The notes under the pieces are model-generated. The model did not search any database. It was not told the DNA's origin and saw only the letters and a program-made list of their open reading frames with translations. Both the position numbers and the translations under genes were made by a program. From assembly GCF_006345805.1 (NCBI RefSeq), contig NC_043006.1, forward strand, positions 101,990,001 through 102,054,000: 64,000 nucleotides of DNA, read 5' to 3'. The stretch is from Octopus sinensis. Its lineage: Eukaryota. Position 1 is the stretch's first letter. The number at the start of each line of letters is the position of its first letter. Shown piece after piece: positions 6,540 through 54,695 of this stretch.

Positions 6540-6740
6540 TGTCATGCAAGTGGCACCCATACCAATGGCATGTAAAAGCACCCATTACACACTCTGAGGG
6601 GTTGGCATTAGGAAGGGCATCCAGTTGTAGAAAACCATGCCAAATCAGACTGGAGTCTGGTGCAGCCTTCCAGCATGTCAGCCCAGTCAAACTGTCCAAC
6701 CCATGCCAGCATGGACAATGGATTTTAAATGGTGATGATG

Positions 6741-6742
<2 letters not shown>
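6540..6742 (+). mobile_element. RTE tail-only copy
   Basis: GGCATTAGGAAGGGCATCCAGTTGTAG..CCATGCCAGCATGG..GATGATGAT then (TA)n. Confidence 0.8.
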
Positions 6743-15314: not shown

Positions 15315-16159
15315 GTTTTATGTTACCATGCCAGGTAAAATGCTGTCTGACTCTACATTCTAAATTTATATTCCACCAAGATTGACTTTGCCTTACATCC
15401 TTGGGGGCAGGTCAATAAAATGAGTACCAGTTGAATACTGAGATCGATGTAATCGACTTATCCCCTCCCCAAAAATTGCCAGCCTTGTGCCAGAATTTGG
15501 AACAATTATTATTATTATGTGGTTGGCTTTTGTTTTGTATTTATACAAACTGACTCTAAGTCTTACACAGAGACCTCAAGAGACAACAATTTAGAAGTTC
15601 AAGTTGGTGTTATGACAAGGGTGCCATATTTTCGGTTTTGTACAGAGTATTGTTTTTTAGAATGTCTGTCAAAACATTATTATTATTATTATTATTATTA
15701 GCAGCAGCAGTTTTTGGATGTAGCAGACTTTGAGTAGATGTGGGTATATTATTGAAGTCACAAATAATGACGAACAGACTCTGGCAAACTGATTGATTGA
15801 TCAAAAGAATGGCCATATAATTAATTGATTAGTTGGATAATTAGTTAACTAGTTGAGTAATAATAATAATTATAGAAGGAATCAAAATATAAGCAGTGTG
15901 TGTGTTTTTAGTGACATTGATTTATACAAACACTAGTAACAAACTAAAATAGTCTTTAAGTGTGTGTGAGTATATGTGCATGCATGTATATGAGTGTTTG
16001 ATGCTATTTTGATGTTGGATACCCATCTCTCTATGCCTGAAATCAGGAGAGGAGAATGTTTCAACATTAAAACATTTGTATTATTGTAAGGGATTTGTTT
16101 ATGTAAAATCTTAATCACGTTACTCTTTCTAAAAACTCATTTTGAATGTAATTTAAATT

Positions 16160-17740
16160 CATCATCATCATCATCATCGTTTTCCATGCTGGCATGGGTT
16201 GGTCAGTTCGACTGGGGACTGGCAAGCCAGGAGGCTGCACCAGGATCCAATCTGATCTGTCAAGGTTTCTACAGCTGGATGCACTTCCTAATGTCAACCA
16301 CTCCGTGAGTGTAGTGGGTGCTTTTTACATGCCACCAGCAAGTCAGCCAGTCAGTCAGTACTGGCATTGGCCATGTTCAGATGATGCTTTTTATGTGGCA
16401 CCAACATGGGGAGCCAGTCAGGCAGCACTGGTAATGACCCACACATGAATAGTACTTATTGCATGCAACCAGCACAGGAGCCAATCAGGTGGCACTAGCA
16501 TCAGCCACAACTACAATTTCCATTTTGATTTCAATTTCATTGAGATTCTGATTGTAATTTTGATATTGATTTTTTATTTTTGATTTTACTTGACTCAATA
16601 GGTTTCCTCAAGCACGGTGTGTTGCCCAATGATTCAAAGGTACTTTTTAAATGGGCTGGTTATACAACACTGGCATTGGCTACGGCTGTGATCTCACTTT
16701 ACTTGCCGGGTCTTCTCAATCACAGCATATCTCCAGAGGTCTTGGTCTCTTGTCATTGCCTCTGTGAGGCCAAACACTCGAAGGTTGTACTTCAACACCT
16801 CATCCCATGTCTTCCTGGATCTCCCCCTTCTATGGGTTCCTTCCCCTGTTAGGGAATGACACATCTTCATACAGCTCTCCTCATCCATATGCAGCACATG
16901 ACCATACCAGCGCAGTTGTCTCCCTTGCACACCACATCTGATGCTTCTTATGTACAACCTGATCCAGCAGTTTGATACCCTTGTAGTTATTTCTATCTAA
17001 AACATCACCTTTACCTTTGTAGCAGTTGACTATGGTGCTGCTACAGCAGTCATTGGTTATGACTCCTTCGTGAACCACCTGATTTACAATACAGGGGACT
17101 AGACCATAACCCACACCACCAGATATTTTAAGCATCTCAACAATGATTCCTGATGGGGTGGGGGCTTTTCCTGATTTCATATCCTTAATTGCTTTATCTA
17201 CCAAGAGGCTATAGATTCAAGTAGCTGGGTCAACACTTGGCAGGCTCTCCTCCTCCCATTCATTATCCACATTCAGCAGCCTTTCATAATAGCATCTCCA
17301 AGCCTCTTTCTTTGCAGAATCATTAAAAAGCAAGTGCACCATCATCCTTGCACACACTTTTCTCTCATACTGTTTTGCAATCTGAAATACTTCAGTACTT
17401 TGGTCCTCACTTCACTGAACATTGGCAAAATTCTTTTCTGTTTCTCCCTTGGATATATATGCCTGTCTCCCAGCCTCCTTTCTGTCTATCTGGTACAGTT
17501 TCCTACTACCCCCACTGTTCCAGGTTTTCCAAGCCTGTTTCTTTGCTCTAATGACCTTGTTTACTGTATTATTCCACCACCACGCTGCCCTAGGTTTGGA
17601 AGGGACTTATCACCAGCTGCAGATTTGGTCTGTGGTGCTCAGTAAGCTGTTACATAGGAATTTCCAGTTACCCTCTATGTCACAAGTCTGTAGCTCTTCC
17701 CCCCTTTCAACAGATATTTGGTATTGGTGGTGGGGGTGGG
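16160..17740 (-). mobile_element. Older RTE LINE copy with internal deletion of the RT core and PHD
   Basis: NWKFLCNSLLSTTDQICSW, VDKAIKDMKSGKAPTPSG and NYKGIKLLDQV joined at about 16957 to SIRCGVQGRQLRWYGHV; (CAT)n tail at 16160. Confidence 0.9.
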
Positions 17741-33984: not shown

Positions 33985-34282
33985 ATAAAAAAAAAACATT
34001 CAAGCAAGGTCGTTGCCAGTGCCGCTGTGCAGGTGGAACATAAAAAACACCATTTGAGTGTGGCTGATGCCAGTACAACCTGACTGGCCCTCATGCGAGT
34101 GGCATGTAAAAAGCACCCACTACACTCTCAGAGTGGTTGGCATTAAGAAAGGCATCCAGCTGTAGAAACTCTGCCAGATTAGATTGGAGTCTGGTGCAGC
34201 CTTCTGGTTCGCCAGACCTCAGTCAAATCGCCCAACCCATGCTAGCATGGAAGGTGGACGTTAAACGATGATGAAGATGATA
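33985..34282 (+). mobile_element. RTE 3' UTR/tail-only copy
   Basis: CACCCACTACACTCTC..GGCATCCAGCTGTAGAAAC..CCATGCTAGCATGG..(GAT)n. Confidence 0.85.
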
Positions 34283-34465
34283 CATATATATAATACACAC
34301 ACACACACACATATATATATACATGTTTATATATATGTATATATATATATGTAGATATATATATGTTTTATATATATATATGTAGATACATATATGTACA
34401 TATATATATGTACATATATATATATGTTCATATGTATATATTTTATATATGTTGATATGTATATA

Positions 34466-35715
34466 TCATCATCATCATTGTTTAACGTCCGTTTTCCATG
34501 CTAGCATGGGTTGGATGGTTTGACCGGGGTCTGGGAAGCCAGGAGGCTGCGCCAGGCTCCAGTCTGATCTGGCAGAGGTTCTACAGCTGGATGCCCTTCC
34601 TAACGCCAACCATTCGAAGAGCCTTAGAATCAACCTAGCTAAAACGAAAGTCCTAATAACTAGGAAGGCAGGCGAACCACAAATCCCTTCAGGTAGATGG
34701 CCCTGCTCGATCTGTAGAAAAGGCGTAGGTAGAAACTCTATAAGATATACCTGGTGTAAACTATGGACATATAAGAGGTGCAGCAATATCAAAGGAAGGC
34801 TAACTGGGAAGATAGTTTTTGTATGTGGCAGATGCTCAGGAGCAATAAACACTGAAAATGTGCAGAGACCAACTTCCGCCACTTTCCAGGGGGAAAAACT
34901 AGAAGTAGTTGATAGCTTCCGTTACCTAGGTGACCAAGTCAGTAGCATGGGCGGGGGGGGGGGGTGCACTGAAAGTGAAGCTGCTAGAATAAGAATAGCC
35001 TGGGCAAAGTTCAGAGATCTCTTACCTCTGCTGATGACATAGGGCCTCTCGTTCAGAGTGAAAGGTAGACTGTATGACGCATGTGTACAAACAGCCATGC
35101 TACATGGCAGTGAAACATGGGCCGTGACTACTGAAGACATGCATAAACTCACAAGGAATGAAGCCAGTATGATCCGATGGATGTGTAATGTCAGTGTGCA
35201 TACTCAACAGAGTGTAAGTGCCTTGAGAGAAAAGTTGGACCTAAGAATCATCAGATGTGGTGTGGAAGAGAGACAACTGCACTGGTATGGTCATTTAGTG
35301 AGAATGGATGTGAAAAAGTGCCACACCCTAGCAGTTGAGGGAATCTGTGGAAGAGGTAGACCCAGGAAGACCTGGGATGAGGTGGTGAAGCACGACCTTT
35401 GAACATTAGGCCTCACCGAGGCAATGATTAGTGACCGAGACTTTTGGAAATATGCTGTGCTTGAGAAGACCCAGCAAGCCAAGTGAGGCCATAACCTTGT
35501 GGCCTATGCCAGGGGTGTAACCAGCCCACTGATGCATACCTTTCGTTCATTGGACATTAAACTCTGCTTGCGAAGACCTGTTCAGGCAAGTGAAATCAAA
35601 TTCGATAACTGGGATCCATTCTAGTGGAGTGCTAAGAGCACCACCCAAGCATGATCATTGCCAGAGCAGCTAACTAGCTTCCGTACCGGTGGCACGTAAG
35701 AGGCACCATTTGATA
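34466..35715. mobile_element. RTE-family LINE copy with 5' inversion: 3' tail on - strand (34466-34617) fused to PHD/C-terminal/3' UTR segment on + strand (34618-35715)
   Basis: Reverse-complement tail with (CAT)n is joined directly to AGAGCCTTAGAATCAACCTAGC (LRINLAKTKVL...WPCSICRKG); degraded frames at 34860-35402. Confidence 0.85.
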
Positions 35716-35772
35716 GTATATAATATGTAATATAATATAATATATAGCATATAATATATAATATTATATATA

Positions 35773-36040
35773 TCACCTTGGCCAACCAATCCGTCGGGCG
35801 TCCATCTGACACCACTGGTCACAGCACGCTGTCCACTCCTCTCTGGATTGCGCCTTTCTTATCTACGTGATCCCAATCGTCCTCCTGAAATCGTAACTTC
35901 ACCATCGTGGAGGCCTTCCGAGTGGTCATTTCCGCTTGCGCAGGTACCACTCGACAACTGCATGGGTCCACCGACTATCAGTGAGCTGGGCGACGTGTCC
36001 AGCCCATCTAAACTTACTGCGTGTATATTCTGTGATGACA
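35773..36040 (-). mobile_element. 3' fragment of a second, distinct RTE-like LINE family
   Basis: Minus-strand translation VITEYTRSKFRWAGHVAQLTDSRWTHAVVEWYLRKRK*PLGRPPRW, a typical RTE-group C-terminus; related to 53713-53880. Confidence 0.8.
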
Positions 36041-36069
36041 TATATAATATTATATATATATATATATAT

Positions 36070-38316
36070 GACAGAATACTTAAGATTAGAATAGTGCTTC
36101 ATAATAGATTAGCAACCATTATATCGGCCTATGCCCCTCAGCCAGGGCTACCCGATGGACAGAAAGACAGTTTCTATGACACCCTACTGCAGACCACCTC
36201 ATTGACGAACGACAGGGACCTTCTCTTTGTGGCTGGTGATTTCAATGGGCATGTTGGACGACATGCTGGGGGCTTCCATGGCGTACATGGAGGCTGCGGT
36301 TATGGTTCCCGCAACGAGGAGGGAACCAGGCTGTTGGAGTTCTGCGATGCAAATGACCTTATGGTCTGCAATACCAACTTCAGGAAACCCACCTCTCACC
36401 TAGTCACCTACCGTTCTGGCAGACACACCAGCCAGATTGACTACATCCTTGCCAGAAAAAGGGAAAGATGGCTGCTTATAAATGCCAAAACCTTCCCAGG
36501 CGAAGAATGCACCCCACAACATAGACTGGTAGTTAGTGACTTTAGGATCAGGACTAAGAGGGCGACTAGAAGACGACCAACATGGAGAAGAAGGGTCTGG
36601 AAGCTAAAAGACCCTGCGAATGGACAGAGATTTAGAGATATGTTACTTGGAGCCTTTGACGAAGTGGAAGGGGGTATAGCTACGCATGGGGTAGAAGACA
36701 ACTGGACGTTTCTGAGGGACAACCTGCTGAAAGCCGCTGACCAGATCTGTGGCTGGTGCAAAGTCCCCTTAAGACCCAAAATAACGTGGTGGTGGAACAA
36801 TATTGTTGACAGGGCTATTAGACAAAAGAAACAGGCTTGGAAGGCCTGGAAGAACGGTGGTAGCAGGGAAGTGTATCAGACTGCCAGAAGGGAAGCTAGG
36901 AGACAGGTCTATCTAGCCAGAGGGGAGGCAGATAAAGAAAAATTTGCCAATGTCCTGCGCCGTGAGGATGAAAGACTTGAGGTATTTCGTGTTGCAAGAC
37001 AGTGTAGAAGAGAGAATCGTGATGTGGTAGGAGAGAAGTGTGTTCACATGGATGATGGTTCACTTGCGCTAAATGAGGATGCAAAGAGAGAGGCTTGGAG
37101 ACGCCACTATGAAAGGTTGCTGAATGAGGAAAATGAATGGGATAAAGAGAGTCTCCCGAATGTCGACCCAACAGAGGGACCAGCAATCCGAGTTAACAAT
37201 TCCTTAGTAGATAAGGCAATTAGAAGCATGAAAACAGGGAAAGCCCCAGGCCCATCAGGAATTACTGCAGAGATGCTCAAAATATCTGGTAGTGTCGGCT
37301 ATAGCTTAGTCACCCGTATAGTAAACCAGGTGATACACGAAGGCGTCATACCCAATGACTGGTGTAGCAGCATAATAGTCAACTGCTACAAAGGTAAAGG
37401 CGACGCCCTAGATACAAATAACTATAGGGGCATCAAGCTGCTGGATCAGGTAATGAAGGTTACGGAGAGGGTTATAGCCCAATTAATTAGAGAGAGAGTT
37501 AGCTTAGATGATATGCAGTTTGGGTTCGTGCCAGGGAAAAGTACTACTGATGCTATATTCCTGGTAAGACAGCTGCAGGAGAAATACCTAGCCAAAGATA
37601 AGCCTTTGTATCTGGCTTTTGTTGACTTGGAGAAAGCCTTTGACAGGGTCCCCCGATCTCTTATCTGGTGGTCAATGAGGAAACTAGGGATAGATGAATG
37701 GTTAGTGAGAGCTGTGCGAGCCATGTACAGAGATGCTGCTAGTAAGGTGAGGGTTGGCAACGAGTACAGTGAAGAATTCCGGGTAGAGGTTGGGGTCCAC
37801 CAAGGTTCAGTCCTCAGTCCCCTCCTATTTATCATAGTCCTCCAGGCAATAACGGAGGAATTCAAGACAGGATGCCCCTGGGAGCTCCTCTATGCTGATG
37901 ACCTTGCTCTAATTGCTGAGTCACTATCAGAACTGGAGGAGAAGTTTCAGGTGTGGAAACAAGGATTAGAATCGAAGGGCCTTAGAATCAACCTAGCCAA
38001 AACCAAAGTCCTAATAAGTAGGAAGGTGGACCAATCACAAACGACTTCAGGTAGATGGCCCTGCTCGATCTGTAAAAAAGGTGTAGGTAGAAACTCTATA
38101 AGGTGCACCAAGTGTAAGCTATGGACACATAAGAGGTGCAGCAATGTCAACGGAAGGCTAACTAAGAAAATAGTTTTTGTCTGTGGCAGATGCTCAGGAG
38201 CAATAAACACTGGAAATGTGCAGAGACCAACTTCTACCACATTCCAGGGAGACAAACTAGAAGTAGTTGATAGCTTCCGCTACCTAGGAGACCAAGTCAG
38301 TAGGTGGGTGTGCTGA
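36070..38316 (+). CDS. LINE ORF, part 1: partial APE endonuclease + reverse transcriptase + PHD finger (no start codon; ends just after a frameshift)
   Basis: Open frame from DRILKIR (36070); YADD at 37891-37902; frame lost at about 38300 in the SSGGGC linker. Confidence 0.9.
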   Translation, partial: DRILKIRIVLHNRLATIISAYAPQPGLPDGQKDSFYDTLLQTTSLTNDRDLLFVAGDFNGHVGRHAGGFHGVHGGCGYGSRNEEGTRLLEFCDANDLMVCNTNFRKPTSHLVTYRSGRHTSQIDYILARKRERWLLINAKTFPGEECTPQHRLVVSDFRIRTKRATRRRPTWRRRVWKLKDPANGQRFRDMLLGAFDEVEGGIATHGVEDNWTFLRDNLLKAADQICGWCKVPLRPKITWWWNNIVDRAIRQKKQAWKAWKNGGSREVYQTARREARRQVYLARGEADKEKFANVLRREDERLEVFRVARQCRRENRDVVGEKCVHMDDGSLALNEDAKREAWRRHYERLLNEENEWDKESLPNVDPTEGPAIRVNNSLVDKAIRSMKTGKAPGPSGITAEMLKISGSVGYSLVTRIVNQVIHEGVIPNDWCSSIIVNCYKGKGDALDTNNYRGIKLLDQVMKVTERVIAQLIRERVSLDDMQFGFVPGKSTTDAIFLVRQLQEKYLAKDKPLYLAFVDLEKAFDRVPRSLIWWSMRKLGIDEWLVRAVRAMYRDAASKVRVGNEYSEEFRVEVGVHQGSVLSPLLFIIVLQAITEEFKTGCPWELLYADDLALIAESLSELEEKFQVWKQGLESKGLRINLAKTKVLISRKVDQSQTTSGRWPCSICKKGVGRNSIRCTKCKLWTHKRCSNVNGRLTKKIVFVCGRCSGAINTGNVQRPTSTTFQGDKLEVVDSFRYLGDQVSRWVC
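38062..38193 (+). other. PHD-type zinc finger (C4HC3) embedded in the LINE ORF
   Basis: CSIC-x10-CTKC-KLWT-H-KR-C-x14-CGRC, the C4HC3 spacing with a W-x-H motif. Confidence 0.85.
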
Positions 38317-38839
38317 AAGTGTAACTGCTAGAGTAAGAATAGCCTGGGCAAAGTTTAGAGAGCTCTTACCCCTGCTGGTGACAAAAGGCCTCTCACTAAG
38401 AGTAAAAGGCAGACTATATGATGCGTGTGTACGTACAGCCATGCTACATGGTAGTGAAACATGGGCCGTGACTGCTGAGGATATGCGTAAGCTCGCAAAA
38501 AATGAAGCCAGTATGCTCCGATGGATGTGTAATGTCAGTGTTCATAATCGTCAGAGTGTAAGTACTTTGAGAGAAAAGTTGAACCTAAGAAGTGTCAGTT
38601 GTGGTGTGCAAGAGAGACGGCTGCGCTGGTATGGTCATGTGACGAGAATGGCTGAAGATAGTTGTGTGCAAAAGTGCTACACCCTTGCAGTTGAGGGAAC
38701 CTGTGGAAGAGGTAGACCCAGGAAAACCTGGGACGAGGTGGTGAAGCACGACCTTCGAACTTTAGGTCTCACCAAGGAAATGACTGAAGACCGAGTCCTA
38801 TGGAAGTGTGCTGTGCATGAGAGGACCCGGCAGGACTAG
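38303..38839 (+). CDS. LINE ORF, part 2: C-terminal region after an apparent 5-nt deletion
   Basis: GGCAESVTARVRIAWAKFRELLPLLVTKGLSLRVKGRLY...ERTRQD*; matches the paralogous copy at 34940-35480. Confidence 0.85.
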   Translation, partial: GGCAESVTARVRIAWAKFRELLPLLVTKGLSLRVKGRLYDACVRTAMLHGSETWAVTAEDMRKLAKNEASMLRWMCNVSVHNRQSVSTLREKLNLRSVSCGVQERRLRWYGHVTRMAEDSCVQKCYTLAVEGTCGRGRPRKTWDEVVKHDLRTLGLTKEMTEDRVLWKCAVHERTRQD

Positions 38840-40848
38840 TCAGGCCATATCCCGTGGCCCCTACCTGGGACGTAGTCGATCCACCTGTGCATACCTTCAT
38901 TCTTGTGACACTTGTGAAGACCTGCTGAGACAAGTGAAAATCAAAACAAATCAAAATAGATGAACATCAATGGAATTTGTATCTTTGTGGTACCAGTGCC
39001 GGTGGCACACAAGAATCCATCCGAACGTGGCCGTAGTCAGTACCGCATCACTGGCCATCGTGCTGTGGGCACATAACAAACACCATCCAATCGTGGCCGT
39101 TCGCCAGCCTCATCTAGCACCTGTGTCGGTGGCACACAAAAACACCATCCGAAGACCCGGCAAGACTAGTCAGGCCATAACCCATGGCCCCTACCTGGGA
39201 CGTAGTCAGTCCACCTGTGCATACCTTCCTCCTTGTGATACTTGTGAAGGCCTGTTGAGGCAAGTGAAAATCAAAATCAAATCAAAACAAATCAAAATAG
39301 ATGAACATCAATGGAATTTGTATCTTTGTGGTACCAGTGCCGGTGGCACACAAGAGAAAACCATCCGAAAGTGGCCGTAGCCAGTACCACATCGACTGGC
39401 CTCCGTGCTGTGGGCACATGACAAACACCATCCGATCGTGGCCGTTCGCCAGCCTCATCTAGCACCTGTGTCGGTGGCACATAAAAACACCATCCGAAGA
39501 CCCGGCAAGACTAGTCAGGCCATAACCCATGGCCCCTACCTGCGGCGTAGTCAGTCCACCTGTGCATACCTTCCTTCTTGTGACACTTGTGAAGACCTGT
39601 TGAGGCAAGTGAAAATCAAAACAAATCAAAATAGATGAACATCAATGGAATCTGTATCTTTGTAGTACCAGTGCCGGTGGCACACACTTTGTGGTACCAG
39701 TGCCGGTGGCACACAAGAAAGCCATCCGAACGTGGCCGTAGCCAGTTCCGCATCGACCGGCCTCCGTGCTGTGGGCACATAACAAACACCATCCGATCAT
39801 GGCCGTTCGCCAGCCTCATCTAGCACCTGTGTCGGTGGCACATAAAAACACCATCCGAAGACCCGGCAAGACTAGTCAGTCCACCTGTGCATACCTTCCT
39901 TCTTGTGACACTTGTGAAGACCTGTTGAGGCAAGTGAAAATCAAAATCAAATCAAAATAGATGAACATCAATGGAATTTGTATCTTTGTGGTACCAGTGC
40001 CTGTGGCACACAAGAATCCATCCGAACGTGGCCGTAGTCAGTACCGCATCGACTGGCCATCGTGCTGTGGGCACATAACAAACACCATCCGATCGTGGCC
40101 GTTCGCCAGCCTCATCTAGCACCTGTGTCGGTGGCACATAAAAACACCATCCGAAGACCCGCAAGACTAGTCAGGCCATATCCCATGGCCCCTACCTGGG
40201 ACGTAGTCAGTCCACCTGTGCATACCTTCCTCCTTGTGATACTTGTGAAGGCCTGTTGAGGCAAGTGAAAATCAAAACAAATCAAATCAAATCAAATCAA
40301 AACAAATCAAAATAGATGAACATTAATGGAATTGTATCTTTGTGGTACCAGTGCCGGTGGCACACAAGAAAAGCATCCGAACGTGGCCGTAGCCAGTACC
40401 GCACCGACTGGCCTCCGTGCTGTGGGCACGTAACAAACACCATCCGATCGTGGCCGTTCGCCAGCCTCATCTGGCACCTGTGTCGGTGGCACATAAAAAC
40501 ACCATCCGAAGACCCGGCAAGACTAGTCAGGCCATAACCTGTGGCCCCTACCTGGGACGTAGTCAGTCCACCTGTGCATACCTTCCTTCTTGTGACACTT
40601 GTGAAGACCTGTTGAGGCAAGTGAAAATCAAAACAAATCAAAATAGATGAACATCAATGGAATTTGTATCTTTGTGGTACCAGTGCCGGTGGCACGTGGC
40701 ACACAAGAAAACCATCCAAACGTGGCCGTAGCCAGTACCAGATCGACTGGCCTCCGTGCTGTGGGCACGTAACAAACACCATCCGATCGTGGCCGTTTGC
40801 CAGCCTCATCTGGCACCTGTGTCGGTGGCACATAAAAACACCATCCGA
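38824..40848 (+). repeat. Six tandem units of about 295-360 bp derived from the LINE ORF end and proximal 3' UTR
   Basis: Units start at GACCCG(G)CA(A/G)GACTAGTCAG near 38824, 39154, 39499, 39860, 40156 and 40511; each has an (AAATC)n tract and GGTGGCAC...CCATCCGA sub-repeats. Confidence 0.95.
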
Positions 40849-41266
40849 GCGTGGCCGTCTGCCAGCCTCGTCTGGCACCTGTGTCGGTGGCACATAGAAA
40901 ACACCATCCGAGCGTGGCCGTTTGCCAGCCTCGTCTGGCACCTGTGTCGGTGGCACATAAAATCACCCACTACACTCTCGGAGTGGTTGGCGTTAGGAAG
41001 GGCATCCAGCTGTAGAAACACTGCCAGATCTGACTGGACTGGTGCAGCTTTCGGGCTCCCCAGACCCCAGTTGAACCGTCCAACCCATGCTAGCATGGAA
41101 AGCGGACGTTAAATGATGATGATGATGATGATGATATATATATAATATTATGCCATTAAACACCTTCCAGAGTATGGCCGGATGGAAGGCATTTAATGGC
41201 ATAATATTATATATATATATATATATATATAATATTTTGTTATATTATATCATATTATATGATATA

Positions 41267-41315
<49 letters not shown>

Positions 41316-41391
41316 ATATAATATTATATATTATATGCTATATATTATATTACATTACATATTATATGCTATATATATATATATATTATCT

Positions 41392-41785
41392 TTTGCTTGT
41401 TTCATTCATTAGACTACAACTGTGCTGGTGCACAACCTTGAAGTGATTTTGTCAAACAAATCGATCCCAGGGTTTAATTTTTTTTTTTTAAGCCTAGTAC
41501 TTATTCTATTAGAATCTTTTGCCAAACCTCTAAGTTATGAGGACATAAACACATCAATACCAGTTGTCAAGCAGTGGCATAGGACAGACAAAGACACACA
41601 TACATAGATATATATTTGTGTATGTGTACAAAAAGCCTCTTTCTGTTTCCAGTTACCAAATCCACTCACAAGGTAACAGTCCAAAGCTATAGTAGAAGAC
41701 ACTTGCTCAAGGTGCTTTGCAGTGAGACTGAGACTTGAACCATGTGATTTGGGAGCAAGCTTCTTAGCACACAGCCATGCCTGTG
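41392..41785 (-). mobile_element. SINE S1 (diverged)
   Basis: Match to S1. Confidence 0.8.
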
Positions 41786-41849
41786 CATACACACACACAC
41801 ACATATATATATATATACATTGTAAGATGATAATATATTTATACATACA

Positions 41850-42160
41850 CATATGGCACGTAAAAAGCACCATCCATTCGTGGCTGTTGCCAGCCTCGCC
41901 TGGCCCCCGTGCCGGTGGCACGTAGCACCATCCGTTCGTGCACGTTTGCCAGCTCCGTCTGGCACCTGTGATGGTTGCACGTAAAAAGCACCCACTATGG
42001 AGTGGTTGGCGTTAGGAAGGGCATCCAGCCGTAGAAACACTGCCAGATCAGACTGGGCCTGATGCAGCCTTCTGGCTTCACAGACCCCAGTTGAACCGTC
42101 CAACCCATGCTAGCATGGAAAGTGGACGCTAAATGATGATGATGATGATGATGATGATGA
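41850..42160 (+). mobile_element. RTE 3' UTR/tail-only copy
   Basis: 66-bp-type sub-repeats plus tail and (GAT)n, flanked by (TA)n. Confidence 0.85.
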
Positions 42161-42836
42161 TATATATATATATAAACAGCACTTAGCTACTAAAAAAGTT
42201 ATCCATCCATCAATATGGTGTTGATCACTCAATTTCTAGTTCATTACTTTGCGTATACACAAACAGATACATATTTATGTGAATGTGTGTGTGTATGTAG
42301 ATGAACATGCACAACCTACACATGCATATGCATTATATTCATCATCTCTATGTGATCAAGATAAAGACACGTTGATTTTTGCCTTAATAATCTCTAGCAT
42401 TTTGAAGATGATTATCTAATGGAAGATAATGTAAAAATAATCAGATCCTCCATCAATCTTCCTTCATATGACAGGCTCTTTTTTTTTCTCCGAATTAGCT
42501 CAGGCTTCTCTTTCTAAGAAAATCATGACCCATTTTTGGATGATGAAGGAAATTATATATTGTCAGTTATTTAAAAATGAAGGATAATGCAAAACAAAAT
42601 CTGTATTTATTCTATGATACTCATTTTTATGATGTTTTTTCATTTTCTTTTTTATTTTACATTCGTTTATATACAGGCAAACACTCATGCACACACACAC
42701 ACACACACACATACTCTCTCTCTCTCTCTCTTTCTCCCTCTTCTCTTCCTCTTGCACATACATTCATCATTCACACATCTCTACAAAAATGCAAACATAC
42801 ATACATGTATTTTTGTGTATATATGCAAAAGTACAA

Positions 42837-43320: not shown

Positions 43321-44160
43321 TCATCATCATCATCATCATGTAATGTCTGTTATCCATGCTGGCATGGATTGGATGGTTTGCCTAGGTTGGCATGCTGGAA
43401 GGCTGCACCAGGCTCCAGTCTGATTTGACATGGTTTTTTACAGCTGGATGCCCTTCCTAACGCCAACTGCTTCAATTGTGTAATGGGGGCTTTTATGTGC
43501 CATTTGCATGACACTGCAATTTTGTTCAGCTTGATGGGTCTTCTTCTCAAGTATGACATAATGCCAAAGGTCTCAGTCATTGCCTCCATGAGGCCCAACA
43601 CTCGAAAAGAACTCAGCCACTTTCTCTCCATGAGGACCACTTGAAAGGAACTCAGCCATCTTACCTCTATGAAGCCCAACATTCAAAGATTGTTATTTTT
43701 AGGTGCCACCAGCACAGGTTCACTTGGTTTGATGGTTCCTCTTAAGCAGAGCACGTTGCCAAAGATCTTGGTCATTAGTCATTGCTTCTGTGAGGTTCAA
43801 AGTTCAAAGATCATGCTTCACCACCTCGTCCCATGCCTTCTTAGGTCTACTTCTGCCACAGGTTCTCTCAGTTAGAGATTGGCACTTCTTTACACAGCTG
43901 TCATCATCCATACACATCATATGACCATACCAGTGCAGTCTCTCTTGCACACAACATCTGATTCCTCTTATGCCTAACTGTTCTCTCAAGATGCTTACAC
44001 TCTGTCAAACATCCACACTGACATTGCACATCCAGCAAAGCACACTGGCTTCATTTCTCTCAAGCCTATGCATGTCCTCAGCTGTTAGAGCCCATGTTTC
44101 ACTGCCATGCAGCATAGCTGTTCACACACACTGGCATCAAACAATCTGCCTTTCACTCTG
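43321..44160 (-). mobile_element. RTE 3' fragment(s) with duplicated ORF end and a short triplicated motif at about 43580-43685
   Basis: GIRCCVQERLHWYGHM...GRSRPKKAWDEVVKHDL; tail with (CAT)n at 43321. Confidence 0.8.
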
Positions 44161-54274: not shown

Positions 54275-54695
54275 TGGCCGATGCCAGCCTCGCCTGGCAC
54301 TAGTGCAGGTGGCACGTAAAAAGCACCCACTACACTCACGGAGTGGTTGGCGTTAGGAAGGGCATCCAGCTGTAGAAACATTGCCAGATAAGACTGGAGC
54401 CTGGTGCAGCCTTCTGGCTTCCAAGATCCCCTGTCGAACCGTCCAACCCATGCTAGCATGGAGAACGGACATTAAACGATGAAGATGATGATGATATATA
54501 TATATATATATATATATATATGGTGATATGCTAAAGGTAGCCATGTTGGCAACATATACAAGATACCCAATACACTCTGCAGTGGTTAGCATTAGGAATG
54601 GCATCCAGCTGTAGAAACCAAGCCAAAACAGACTGGAGCCTGATGCAGCCTTCCGGTTTACCAGTTCCAGTCAAACCATCTTACCATGCCAGCAC
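54275..54695 (+). mobile_element. Two RTE tail-only copies (54275-54495, 54580-54695)
   Basis: Same tail motifs as 40960-41137. Confidence 0.8.

What the first reader, a model, noticed from the sequence alone, without database searches (positions are those of the whole stretch)
38824..40960. LINE 3' UTR amplified into a six-unit array with a duplicated-trimer higher-order structure
Seen: the last codons, stop and ~330 nt of 3' UTR repeat six times between an almost intact ORF and the normal tail, with junction CACCATCCGA|AGACCCGG. Diagnostic variants pair units 1 and 4 (AAGAATCCATCC, GTAGTCAG, GGCCATCG) and units 2 and 5 (CCTTGTGATAC, GAAGGCC). Units 3 and 6 both carry small duplications around GTGGCAC. 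This gives (ABC)(A'B'C') with a ~1.0-kb period. Unit 4 lacks ~39 bp between two TAGTCAG repeats. Units are themselves built from ~60-66-bp sub-repeats with small hairpins (GCCAG-CCTCGT-CTGGC). Inference: a three-level hierarchy, i.e. a nascent satellite born inside a retrotransposon. It could come from iterative RT template jumping followed by DNA-level duplication, or be inherited from a source element whose 3' UTR is a variable tandem repeat.
Basis: partly seen in the sequence, partly recalled or inferred. Interest (0 to 1): 0.75.

Follow-up and report, generated by a model that had tools for sequence, protein, structure and literature searches.

The report
Six-unit tandem array in LINE tail
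A dead, truncated octopus-type LINE retrotransposon carries a real six-fold tandem repeat of its last codons plus about 330 nt of 3' UTR, which is an ordinary small example of a transposon-derived tandem repeat, and the proposed duplicated-trimer structure holds for only about one unit's length.

Summary
Six head-to-tail units of 296-361 bp span 38823-40849. They lie between the end of an RTE-like LINE ORF and the family's normal 3' end. The junction CACCATCCGA|AGACCCG recurs five times.

A close relative (L002, 93% identical at the ORF end) and three more distant copies each carry one unit. The array is therefore an amplification of [last 17 nt of ORF + stop ... first 21-22 nt of the third 63-bp sub-repeat].

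The host LINE is not "almost intact". It lacks about 175 N-terminal codons and has a frameshift.

The (ABC)(A'B'C') reading is only partly right:
- Units 1/4 group at 98% bootstrap, but only in their 3' halves.
- Units 2/5 group at 82%, but only in their 5' halves.
- Units 3/6 do not group (0.2%).
- Two derived sites shared by units 1-4 but not 5-6 contradict a clean trimer duplication.

The lag-3 similarity is one contiguous patch of about 270-400 bp, 1.1% divergent against 4.9% elsewhere. The 63-bp sub-repeats are an old family trait. Their hairpins have no statistical support.

Best reading: one microhomology-mediated founding duplication, then homology-driven expansion, then one later exchange between units. 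Whether the array arose before or after insertion is unresolved. This is a known kind of feature and of low-to-moderate interest.

The parts
36073..38839 (+). Remnant ORF of an RTE-like LINE: partial AP-endonuclease, reverse transcriptase, PHD-type zinc finger and C-terminal region. It is 5'-truncated and has a frameshift between 38316 and 38378.
   Evidence: Pfam RVT_1 E=1.7e-32; Exo_endo_phos_2 and PHD fall just below their cut-offs. It is 53% identical to the 1102-aa protein P0121, starting at P0121 residue 176. The ORF is split into 35848-38316 and 38378-38839.
38823..39152 (+). Unit 1 (330 bp). It is contiguous with the ORF, and its first 17 nt are the last codons plus the stop TAG. Its 5' 115 nt carry 7 private substitutions.
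39153..39497 (+). Unit 2 (345 bp). Its 5' half shares 3 derived substitutions and an (AAATC)n expansion with unit 5.
39498..39858 (+). Unit 3 (361 bp). It has a private 29-bp tandem duplication at 39658-39715.
39859..40154 (+). Unit 4 (296 bp). It has a 36-bp deletion between TAGTCAG direct repeats. Its 3' half shares 4-5 derived changes with unit 1.
40155..40509 (+). Unit 5 (355 bp). Its 5' half resembles unit 2. Its 3' end keeps the ancestral G at columns 308 and 351, as does unit 6.
40510..40849 (+). Unit 6 (340 bp). It has a private 7-bp GTGGCAC duplication and runs on into the normal 3' end.
40827..40951 (+). Complete 63-bp sub-repeats s3 and s4. The first 22 nt of s3 are the end of unit 6. 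This is the canonical continuation, as in L002.
40952..41133 (+). Family 3' tail ending in (GAT)n. It is shared with at least 10 other LINE/SINE-like copies in the window.
39011..39290 (+). Minimal stretch (U1 3' part + U2 5' part) that shares derived markers with 40013-40310 (U4 3' part + U5 5' part). This is the only real lag-3 similarity.
   Evidence: 3/266 differences inside the patch against 35/708 elsewhere at lag 3, Fisher p=0.005; site patterns

Best explanation
This is a local tandem amplification inside the 3' region of a dead, 5'-truncated RTE-clade LINE copy in an octopus-type genome.

Proposed sequence of events:
1. One illegitimate duplication joined the start of the third 63-bp sub-repeat (...ACACCATCCGA|GCGTGG) to the last 17 nt of the ORF (GAGA|AGACCCGGCAAGACTAG). 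The two sites share a 2-nt GA microhomology. This created a ~345-bp direct repeat.
2. Homology-driven events (unequal sister-chromatid exchange or replication slippage) raised the count to six.
3. A later non-reciprocal exchange of about one unit's length, between the U1|U2 and U4|U5 boundaries, produced the similarity that looks like a duplicated trimer.
4. Small slippage events then marked individual units: a 36-bp deletion, 29-bp and 7-bp duplications, and (AAATC)n length changes.

Shown: the anatomy, the single junction type, the one-unit canonical state, and the mosaic relationships between units.

Inferred: the order of events, and that expansion happened at the DNA level at this locus. 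No function is implied.
For: - The five junctions share one breakpoint, which fits one founding event.
- L002, at 93% identity in the ORF end, has exactly one unit followed by s1-s4 and the tail. Copies B and C in the window and L001 (Octopus vulgaris) also have one unit.
- The host copy cannot be a source element. It is 5'-truncated by ~175 codons and frameshifted.
- Each unit has private substitutions and indels of the slippage type, so the units are distinct sequences and have diverged from one another.
- Unit relationships are a mosaic. U1+U4 group at 99% only in columns 141-end. U2+U5 group at 91% only in columns 1-140. U3+U6 group at 0.2%. The patch differs at 1.1% against 4.9% elsewhere.
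If the hairpin mattered, no constraint has kept it.
Against: - No second individual, orthologous locus or genome-wide census could be examined, so a post-insertion origin is not demonstrated.
- U2-U6 carry none of the 7 private substitutions in U1's 5' 115 nt. Only one change there is shared by all six units.
- The tail has only 3/263 window-private changes.
- Half of the private changes in the ORF end are synonymous.
- Taken together, these points hint that the founding duplication is as old as, or older than, the insertion.
- The one-unit comparators belong to other subfamilies (83-93% identity) and say little about this copy's own source.
Confidence: 0.5

Rival explanations
1. The array, or at least its first duplication, arose before this copy inserted. 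It could have formed at the RNA/cDNA stage by reverse-transcriptase template switching. Alternatively, it could have formed in an active source lineage whose 3' UTR carries a variable number of ~345-bp units. This 5'-truncated copy then inherited it.
For: - U1's 5' 115 nt have 7 private derived substitutions that U2-U6 lack. Only 1 derived change there is shared by all six units.
- Window-private divergence is 4.0% in the ORF end, with a local cluster of 9% at 38786-38930, my tally of the sites, entered in the notebook. It is only 1.1% in the tail. The tail sets an upper bound on post-insertion neutral change.
- ORF-end private changes are 10 synonymous to 10 non-synonymous, against an expected ratio near 1:3. 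Part of that history therefore ran in an active lineage.
- The family's 3' UTR is already built from variable tandem sub-repeats and an (AAATC)n tract, so its sources tolerate internal duplications.
Against: - Every other copy that could be read has one unit.
- The junction is absent elsewhere in the window, even with up to 3 mismatches.
- Five identical junctions do not fit five independent jumps.
- The rate argument is weak. The counts are small, the data are not clock-like (U2-U6 5' halves show 0-4 changes and no shared stem change), and divergence from L002 shows no sharp boundary.
Confidence: 0.35
2. This is a true higher-order repeat. A three-unit block ABC was duplicated as a whole to give ABCA'B'C'. 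Later mutation and gene conversion then blurred the 3/6 pairing and parts of the 1/4 and 2/5 pairings.
For: - U1+U4 group at 98% and U2+U5 at 82% bootstrap.
- Mean identity is highest at lag 3: 96.1%, against 94.9% at lag 1 and 94.5% at lag 2.
- U3 and U6 both have an insertion at the same GTGGCAC site. U6's sequence equals U3's duplication minus 22 bp, so a shared origin of that indel is as parsimonious as two independent events.
Against: - U3+U6 bootstrap is 0.2%. They differ at 16/339 sites and share no derived substitution.
- U1/U4 differ at 7/79 sites in the 5' half. U2/U5 show no affinity in the 3' half, where the bootstrap is 2%.
- Derived A at columns 308 and 351 is shared by U1-U4, while U5-U6 are ancestral.
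- Heterogeneity of lag-3 divergence gives p=0.005.
- One unequal crossover cannot produce 6 units from 3. An offset of three units needs at least 4 units and yields 7.
Confidence: 0.15
3. The array is an assembly artefact. The true locus has fewer units, perhaps one, and the assembler expanded the repeat.
For: No read-level data were available, and tandem repeats are prone to misassembly.
Against: - Every unit has its own private substitutions and indels: the 36-bp deletion, the 29-bp and 7-bp duplications, and different (AAATC)n lengths.
- Pairwise divergence between units is 3-6%.
- An artefactual expansion would give near-identical copies.
Confidence: 0.04
4. The array formed by repeated head-to-tail insertion of 5'-truncated LINE copies into the same site, the "double insertion" route to TE tandem arrays.
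For: The window is a nest of related insertions over 34025-42150.
Against: - Units end inside sub-repeat s3. They lack s3-s4, the ~170-nt tail and the (GAT)n end that every true insertion carries.
- All junctions are identical and have no target-site duplication.
Confidence: 0.01

Closest known systems
Satellite or tandem repeats derived from LINE 3' ends. Examples listed in the review PMC9659126: chicken HinfI/SCR1 from the CR1 3' UTR plus part of ORF2, the common cetacean satellite from the L1 3' UTR, and Drosophila 18HT from the HeT-A 3' non-coding region.
   Same: The repeated unit is the ORF end plus 3' UTR of a non-LTR retrotransposon. Units lie head to tail. Divergence between units and exchange between them are visible.
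   Different: Here there are six units at one locus inside an identifiable element. This is not an abundant or multi-locus satellite. Genome-wide abundance could not be tested.
Tandem repeats in the hypervariable 3' UTR of Ty3/gypsy Ogre elements that seed plant satellites (PMC7004042; PisTR-A, cited in PMC9659126).
   Same: A retroelement 3' UTR that is already internally repetitive gives rise to longer arrays. The hierarchy is short repeats inside longer units.
   Different: Ogre is an LTR element, and its repeats are carried by many active copies and then expand. Here the related copies that were read carry one unit, and the host copy is dead.
Tandem TE dimers from double insertion, later expanded by unequal exchange (McGurk and Barbash 2018, PMC5932611).
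   Same: A first TE-derived direct repeat acts as substrate for expansion by unequal exchange.
   Different: The founding repeat here is an internal duplication with a 2-nt microhomology junction. It is not two insertions, because the units lack the element's 3' end.
Octopus RTE-clade LINEs such as RTE-2_OV (Petrosino et al. 2022, PMC9115989).
   Same: Both have a single ORF of about 1100 aa with endonuclease, RT and a zinc finger. Both have a repeat-rich 3' UTR of a few hundred nt. The closest named protein hit comes from Octopus vulgaris.
   Different: RTE-2_OV is described with a microsatellite making up most of its 3' UTR. Identity with that element was not tested, since no sequence was to hand. 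No ~345-bp unit array is described there.
Alpha-satellite-type higher-order repeats.
   Same: Some units are most similar at a lag of three units.
   Different: The lag-3 similarity covers only about one unit's length, and one of the three expected pairs fails. Lag-3 identity (96.1%) barely exceeds lag-1 identity (94.9%).

Membership tests
RTE-clade non-LTR retrotransposon (LINE) | Reverse transcriptase domain | tested here: met
   Pfam RVT_1 E=1.7e-32, 113 bits against a cut-off of 29.6
RTE-clade non-LTR retrotransposon (LINE) | N-terminal AP-type endonuclease in the same single ORF, with no ORF1 | tested here: inconclusive
   Exo_endo_phos_2 scores 25.2 bits, just under the 27.4 cut-off. Only the C-terminal half of the domain remains, because the copy is 5'-truncated. 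Full-length homologues of 1000-1100 aa carry PF03372 + PF00078 (+ PF00628) on ~3.3-4 kb contigs.
RTE-clade non-LTR retrotransposon (LINE) | 3' end made of a conserved tail plus short tandem repeats instead of poly(A) | tested here: met
   The tail ends in (GAT)n at ~41110-41133. The same end is present in L002, copies B and C, and other tails.
RTE-clade non-LTR retrotransposon (LINE) | Phylogenetic placement of the RT within the RTE clade | not tested
   No reference RT set was used. The assignment rests on architecture and on the description of octopus RTE elements in PMC9115989.
Satellite DNA | Head-to-tail units with a constant junction | tested here: met
   Five junctions with the same breakpoint; TRF period 345/355
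Satellite DNA | Long arrays and/or many loci (high genomic abundance) | not testable with these tools
   There are six units at one locus. The junction is absent elsewhere in the 64-kb window. Public collections held almost no DNA of this organism: the control pattern gave only 2 chance hits.
Higher-order repeat (duplicated trimer) | Every monomer is closest to the monomer one period away, over its whole length | tested here: not met
   U1/U4 group only in the 3' half, U2/U5 only in the 5' half, and U3/U6 not at all (0.2% bootstrap). Columns 308 and 351 conflict with the model.
LINE with an inherited variable tandem-repeat 3' UTR (source-element VNTR) | Independent insertions of the family carry the same repeat unit in varying number | tested here: inconclusive
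   At the 63-bp level this is met: different copies have 2-4 sub-repeats. At the 345-bp level, the four other copies read have one unit, but they belong to other subfamilies.
TE tandem array by double insertion | Each unit carries the element's true 3' end at the internal junctions | tested here: not met
   Units stop 22 nt into sub-repeat s3 and lack the tail and (GAT)n.

The most novel reading that the evidence does not exclude
The ~345-bp unit array was made at the cDNA stage by the RTE reverse transcriptase switching template between repeats. It would then be carried by an active octopus LINE subfamily as a heritable, variable-number 3' UTR array. That subfamily would scatter satellite seeds (ORF end + 3' UTR units) across the genome. 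The excess of private changes in the first unit and the clean tail would be traces of that pre-insertion history.
Probability: 0.2. Interest if true: 0.5.

Novelty: new member of a known kind. Interest (0 to 1): 0.25.

Why it matters
If the array grew at this locus, it is a small, well-resolved snapshot of a known process. The steps are an illegitimate internal duplication in a retrotransposon, expansion by unequal exchange, and patchy conversion between units. It is useful as an example, not as a discovery.

It would matter more if the same junction turned up in independent insertions. Then an active octopus LINE lineage would carry a variable 3' UTR array, and satellite seeding by retrotransposition could be followed in a genome where LINEs and SINEs make up about a quarter of the DNA (PMC13282606).

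For the scan, the practical lesson is about method. Shared "diagnostic variants" at a fixed lag can come from one short exchange tract. They do not by themselves show a higher-order repeat.

Tried and rejected
- An exact scan of JGI metagenome contigs for the junction 22-mer found nothing. A control scan with the canonical sub-repeat junction found only two contigs matching ~21 nt, which are chance hits. That collection holds essentially no DNA of this organism, so the negative result is uninformative.
- A protein search with a junction-spanning spurious ORF (38970-39380) found nothing. It is uninformative for the same reason.
- An exact look-up of the window's 153-aa ORF end found it not on record.
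- The 822-aa ORF search returned only RTE-like proteins at or below 53% identity, mostly from metagenomes and fish. It gave no further octopus copies to count units in.
- RNAalifold on 16 sub-repeats from diverged copies predicted no consensus structure. Single sub-repeats fold no better than shuffled sequence. Rfam found nothing above threshold in 35000-42500. The hairpin idea was dropped.
- I considered a chimeric element, with the ORF + U1 5' part from one subfamily and the array + tail from another. Divergence from L002 shows no sharp boundary: unit 3' halves are 7-9%, like the ORF. The idea is not supported.
- I considered tandem double insertion and rejected it, because the units lack the element's 3' end.
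- I considered A-to-I editing as the source of U1's private changes. Only 2-3 of the 7 are A>G or T>C, so it is not supported.
Full report
**What is there**

Tandem Repeats Finder reports arrays of period 345/355 across 38824-40848, with scores 1512 and 1391. It also reports a 63-bp repeat at 40764-40967.

The junction CACCATCCGA|AGACCCG occurs five times. As a 22-mer it occurs four times exactly, with none expected in shuffles. The fifth copy differs by a 1-bp deletion.

This defines six units:

| Unit | Coordinates | Length |
|---|---|---|
| U1 | 38823-39152 | 330 bp |
| U2 | 39153-39497 | 345 bp |
| U3 | 39498-39858 | 361 bp |
| U4 | 39859-40154 | 296 bp |
| U5 | 40155-40509 | 355 bp |
| U6 | 40510-40849 | 340 bp |

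Each unit starts with AGACCCGGCAAGACTAG, the last codons and stop of the upstream ORF. In U1 this reads GGACCCGGCAGGACTAG. After U6 the sequence continues with two complete 63-bp sub-repeats, a ~170-nt tail and (GAT)n.

**The host element**

The ORF has RT, a partial AP-endonuclease and a PHD-type finger. It is 53% identical to ~1100-aa single-ORF proteins encoded on ~3.3-4 kb contigs. That is an RTE-like architecture, as described for octopus RTE elements (PMC9115989).

The nearest named protein comes from Octopus vulgaris, so the window is probably an octopod genome.

Homology to P0121 starts at its residue 176, which is window position ~36073, next to a (TA)n tract. The frame breaks between 38316 and 38378. 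The copy is therefore 5'-truncated and dead, not "almost intact".

The tail recurs at least 10 times in the window.

**The canonical state**

L002 is an ENA metagenome contig whose ORF end is 93% identical to the window. It shows the normal layout: stop codon, ~190 nt, (AAATC)n, four sub-repeats s1-s4, tail, (GAT)n. It has one unit.

Two diverged copies in the window (B, 17000-16100 minus strand; C, 43900-43280 minus strand) and an O. vulgaris copy (L001) also have one unit.

The window array is therefore [last 17 nt of ORF ... first 21-22 nt of s3] taken six times. The donor site reads ...CCATCCGA|GCGTGG and the acceptor reads GAGA|AGACCC. The founding junction has 2 nt (GA) of microhomology, read directly from the sequences.

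An nhmmer profile finds s1, s2 and a 22-nt stub of s3 in every unit. It also finds sub-repeats in unrelated copies. The 63-bp level is an old family trait.

**The proposed (ABC)(A'B'C') structure**

With L002 as outgroup, the derived-site patterns are as follows:
- U1+U4 share 4-5 derived changes, all in alignment columns 246-293.
- U2+U5 share 3 derived substitutions plus an (AAATC)n expansion, all in columns 79-140.
- U3+U6 share no derived substitution.
- U1-U4 share derived A at columns 308 and 351, where U5, U6 and the downstream s3/s4 keep G.

Neighbour-joining bootstrap values:

| Pair | Whole unit | Columns 1-140 | Columns 141-end |
|---|---|---|---|
| U1+U4 | 98% | 0% | 99% |
| U2+U5 | 82% | 91% | 2% |
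| U3+U6 | 0.2% | 0% | 1.5% |

At lag 3, the stretch U1(3')+U2(5') against U4(3')+U5(5') differs at 3/266 sites. The rest of the lag-3 comparison differs at 35/708 sites (Fisher p=0.005). Mean identity by lag is 94.9% at lag 1, 94.5% at lag 2 and 96.1% at lag 3.

So the lag-3 signal is one contiguous patch of roughly one unit's length. Its minimal extent is ~39011-39290 matched to ~40013-40310. It is not a duplicated trimer.

The U3 and U6 insertions sit at the same GTGGCAC site but differ in size, 29 bp against 7 bp. They could be independent events. Alternatively, U6's could be U3's minus 22 bp. The two histories are equally parsimonious, and no substitution supports the shared one.

A single unequal crossover cannot make 6 units from 3.

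**Mechanism**

One junction type points to one founding illegitimate duplication followed by homology-driven expansion. It does not point to five independent template jumps.

Private slippage-type indels and 3-6% pairwise divergence show that the units have diverged from one another, and they argue against assembly expansion. The mosaic pattern fits gene conversion or double unequal exchange within the array.

I place the expansion at the DNA level at this locus, with moderate confidence of 0.5.

**What speaks for an earlier origin**

- U1's first 115 nt carry 7 private derived substitutions that U2-U6 lack. Only one derived change there is shared by all six units.
- Window-private change is 18/445 in the ORF end. 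It is 13/145 in the stretch 38786-38930, my tally of the sites, entered in the notebook. It is only 3/263 in s3-s4-tail.
- Private changes in the ORF end are 10 synonymous to 10 non-synonymous.

Together these suggest two things. Much of this copy's private history ran in an active lineage. The founding duplication came early in that history, possibly before insertion.

The argument is weak, for three reasons. The counts are small. U2-U6 do not behave in a clock-like way. Divergence from L002 shows no sharp boundary. I give the pre-insertion reading 0.35.

**Hairpins**

Single sub-repeats fold no better than shuffled sequence (z -1.4 to +0.4). Sixteen diverged sub-repeats give no consensus structure. 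In U1-U4 the s2 motif CTGGC has become CTAGC. Rfam finds nothing above threshold.

**Comparison with what is known**

Tandem repeats and satellites derived from retroelement 3' regions are well documented. Examples are CR1-derived HinfI/SCR1 (3' UTR plus part of ORF2), the L1 3' UTR-derived cetacean satellite, HeT-A-derived 18HT and Ogre 3' UTR repeats (PMC9659126, PMC7004042). Expansion from a first TE-derived direct repeat is also documented (PMC5932611).

This locus is a small new member of that kind. It does not meet the abundance criterion for a satellite, which could not be tested here. It also does not meet the whole-unit criterion for a higher-order repeat.

**Limits**

The decisive census of the junction in the source genome could not be run.

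Noticed in passing
window 41134-41218: A near-perfect palindrome lies immediately 3' of the LINE's (GAT)n end and inside a (TA)n tract. It has 36-nt arms, 94% complementarity and a 13-nt loop...TATGCCATTAAACACCTTCCA / TGGAAGGCATTTAATGGCATA.... It occurs only here in the window. It gives only sub-threshold miRNA-precursor-like Rfam matches.
   Followed up: partly
window 41083-41112; proteins P0002, P0003: In more distant relatives the LINE ORF ends ...[12 protein letters not shown]. The window's ORF ends ...ERTRQD*, and PTHASMESGR* is encoded about 2.3 kb downstream in the terminal tail motif CCAACCCATGCTAGCATGGAAA. The whole octopus-type 3' UTR may therefore be an expansion inserted between the ORF end and a formerly coding 3' terminus.
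   Followed up: partly
window 34025-35716: A nest of related insertions lies just upstream. It holds a tail copy at 34025-34281 (+), an inverted tail at 34612-34465 (-), and an older LINE copy in the same orientation at 34614-~35716. That copy is 83% identical, has a G-run frameshift near 34950 and is cut off inside its sub-repeats at a (TA)n tract.
   Followed up: partly
window 38786-38930: A cluster of 13 window-private substitutions in 145 nt straddles the 5' boundary of the array. It includes the first base of unit 1 (38823). The rate is about 3-8 times that of the flanking ORF and of the tail. The cause is unknown. It could be a fast-evolving ORF C-terminus and linker in the source lineage, or mutagenic repair at the duplication breakpoint.
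   Followed up: partly
window 36040-36053 and 41134-41150: The motif ATATATAATATTAT occurs on both sides of the truncated LINE, inside (TA)n tracts. It may be a target-site duplication. It cannot be told apart from microsatellite sequence.
   Followed up: no
window 35775-36040: A GC-rich ~270-bp stretch of unknown origin lies between the (TA)n tract that ends the upstream LINE copy and the (TA)n tract at the 5' truncation point. The mechanical 822-aa ORF starts inside it, but it has no homology to the LINE protein.
   Followed up: no
window 6566-6742, 16159-16336, 41854-42150, 43322-43502, 54275-54493 and others: At least 10 copies of the same ~170-nt tail lie in 64 kb. Several carry 1-2 sub-repeats but no ORF. 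They are either SINE-like partners or heavily 5'-truncated LINE copies that share the LINE's 3' end.
   Followed up: partly
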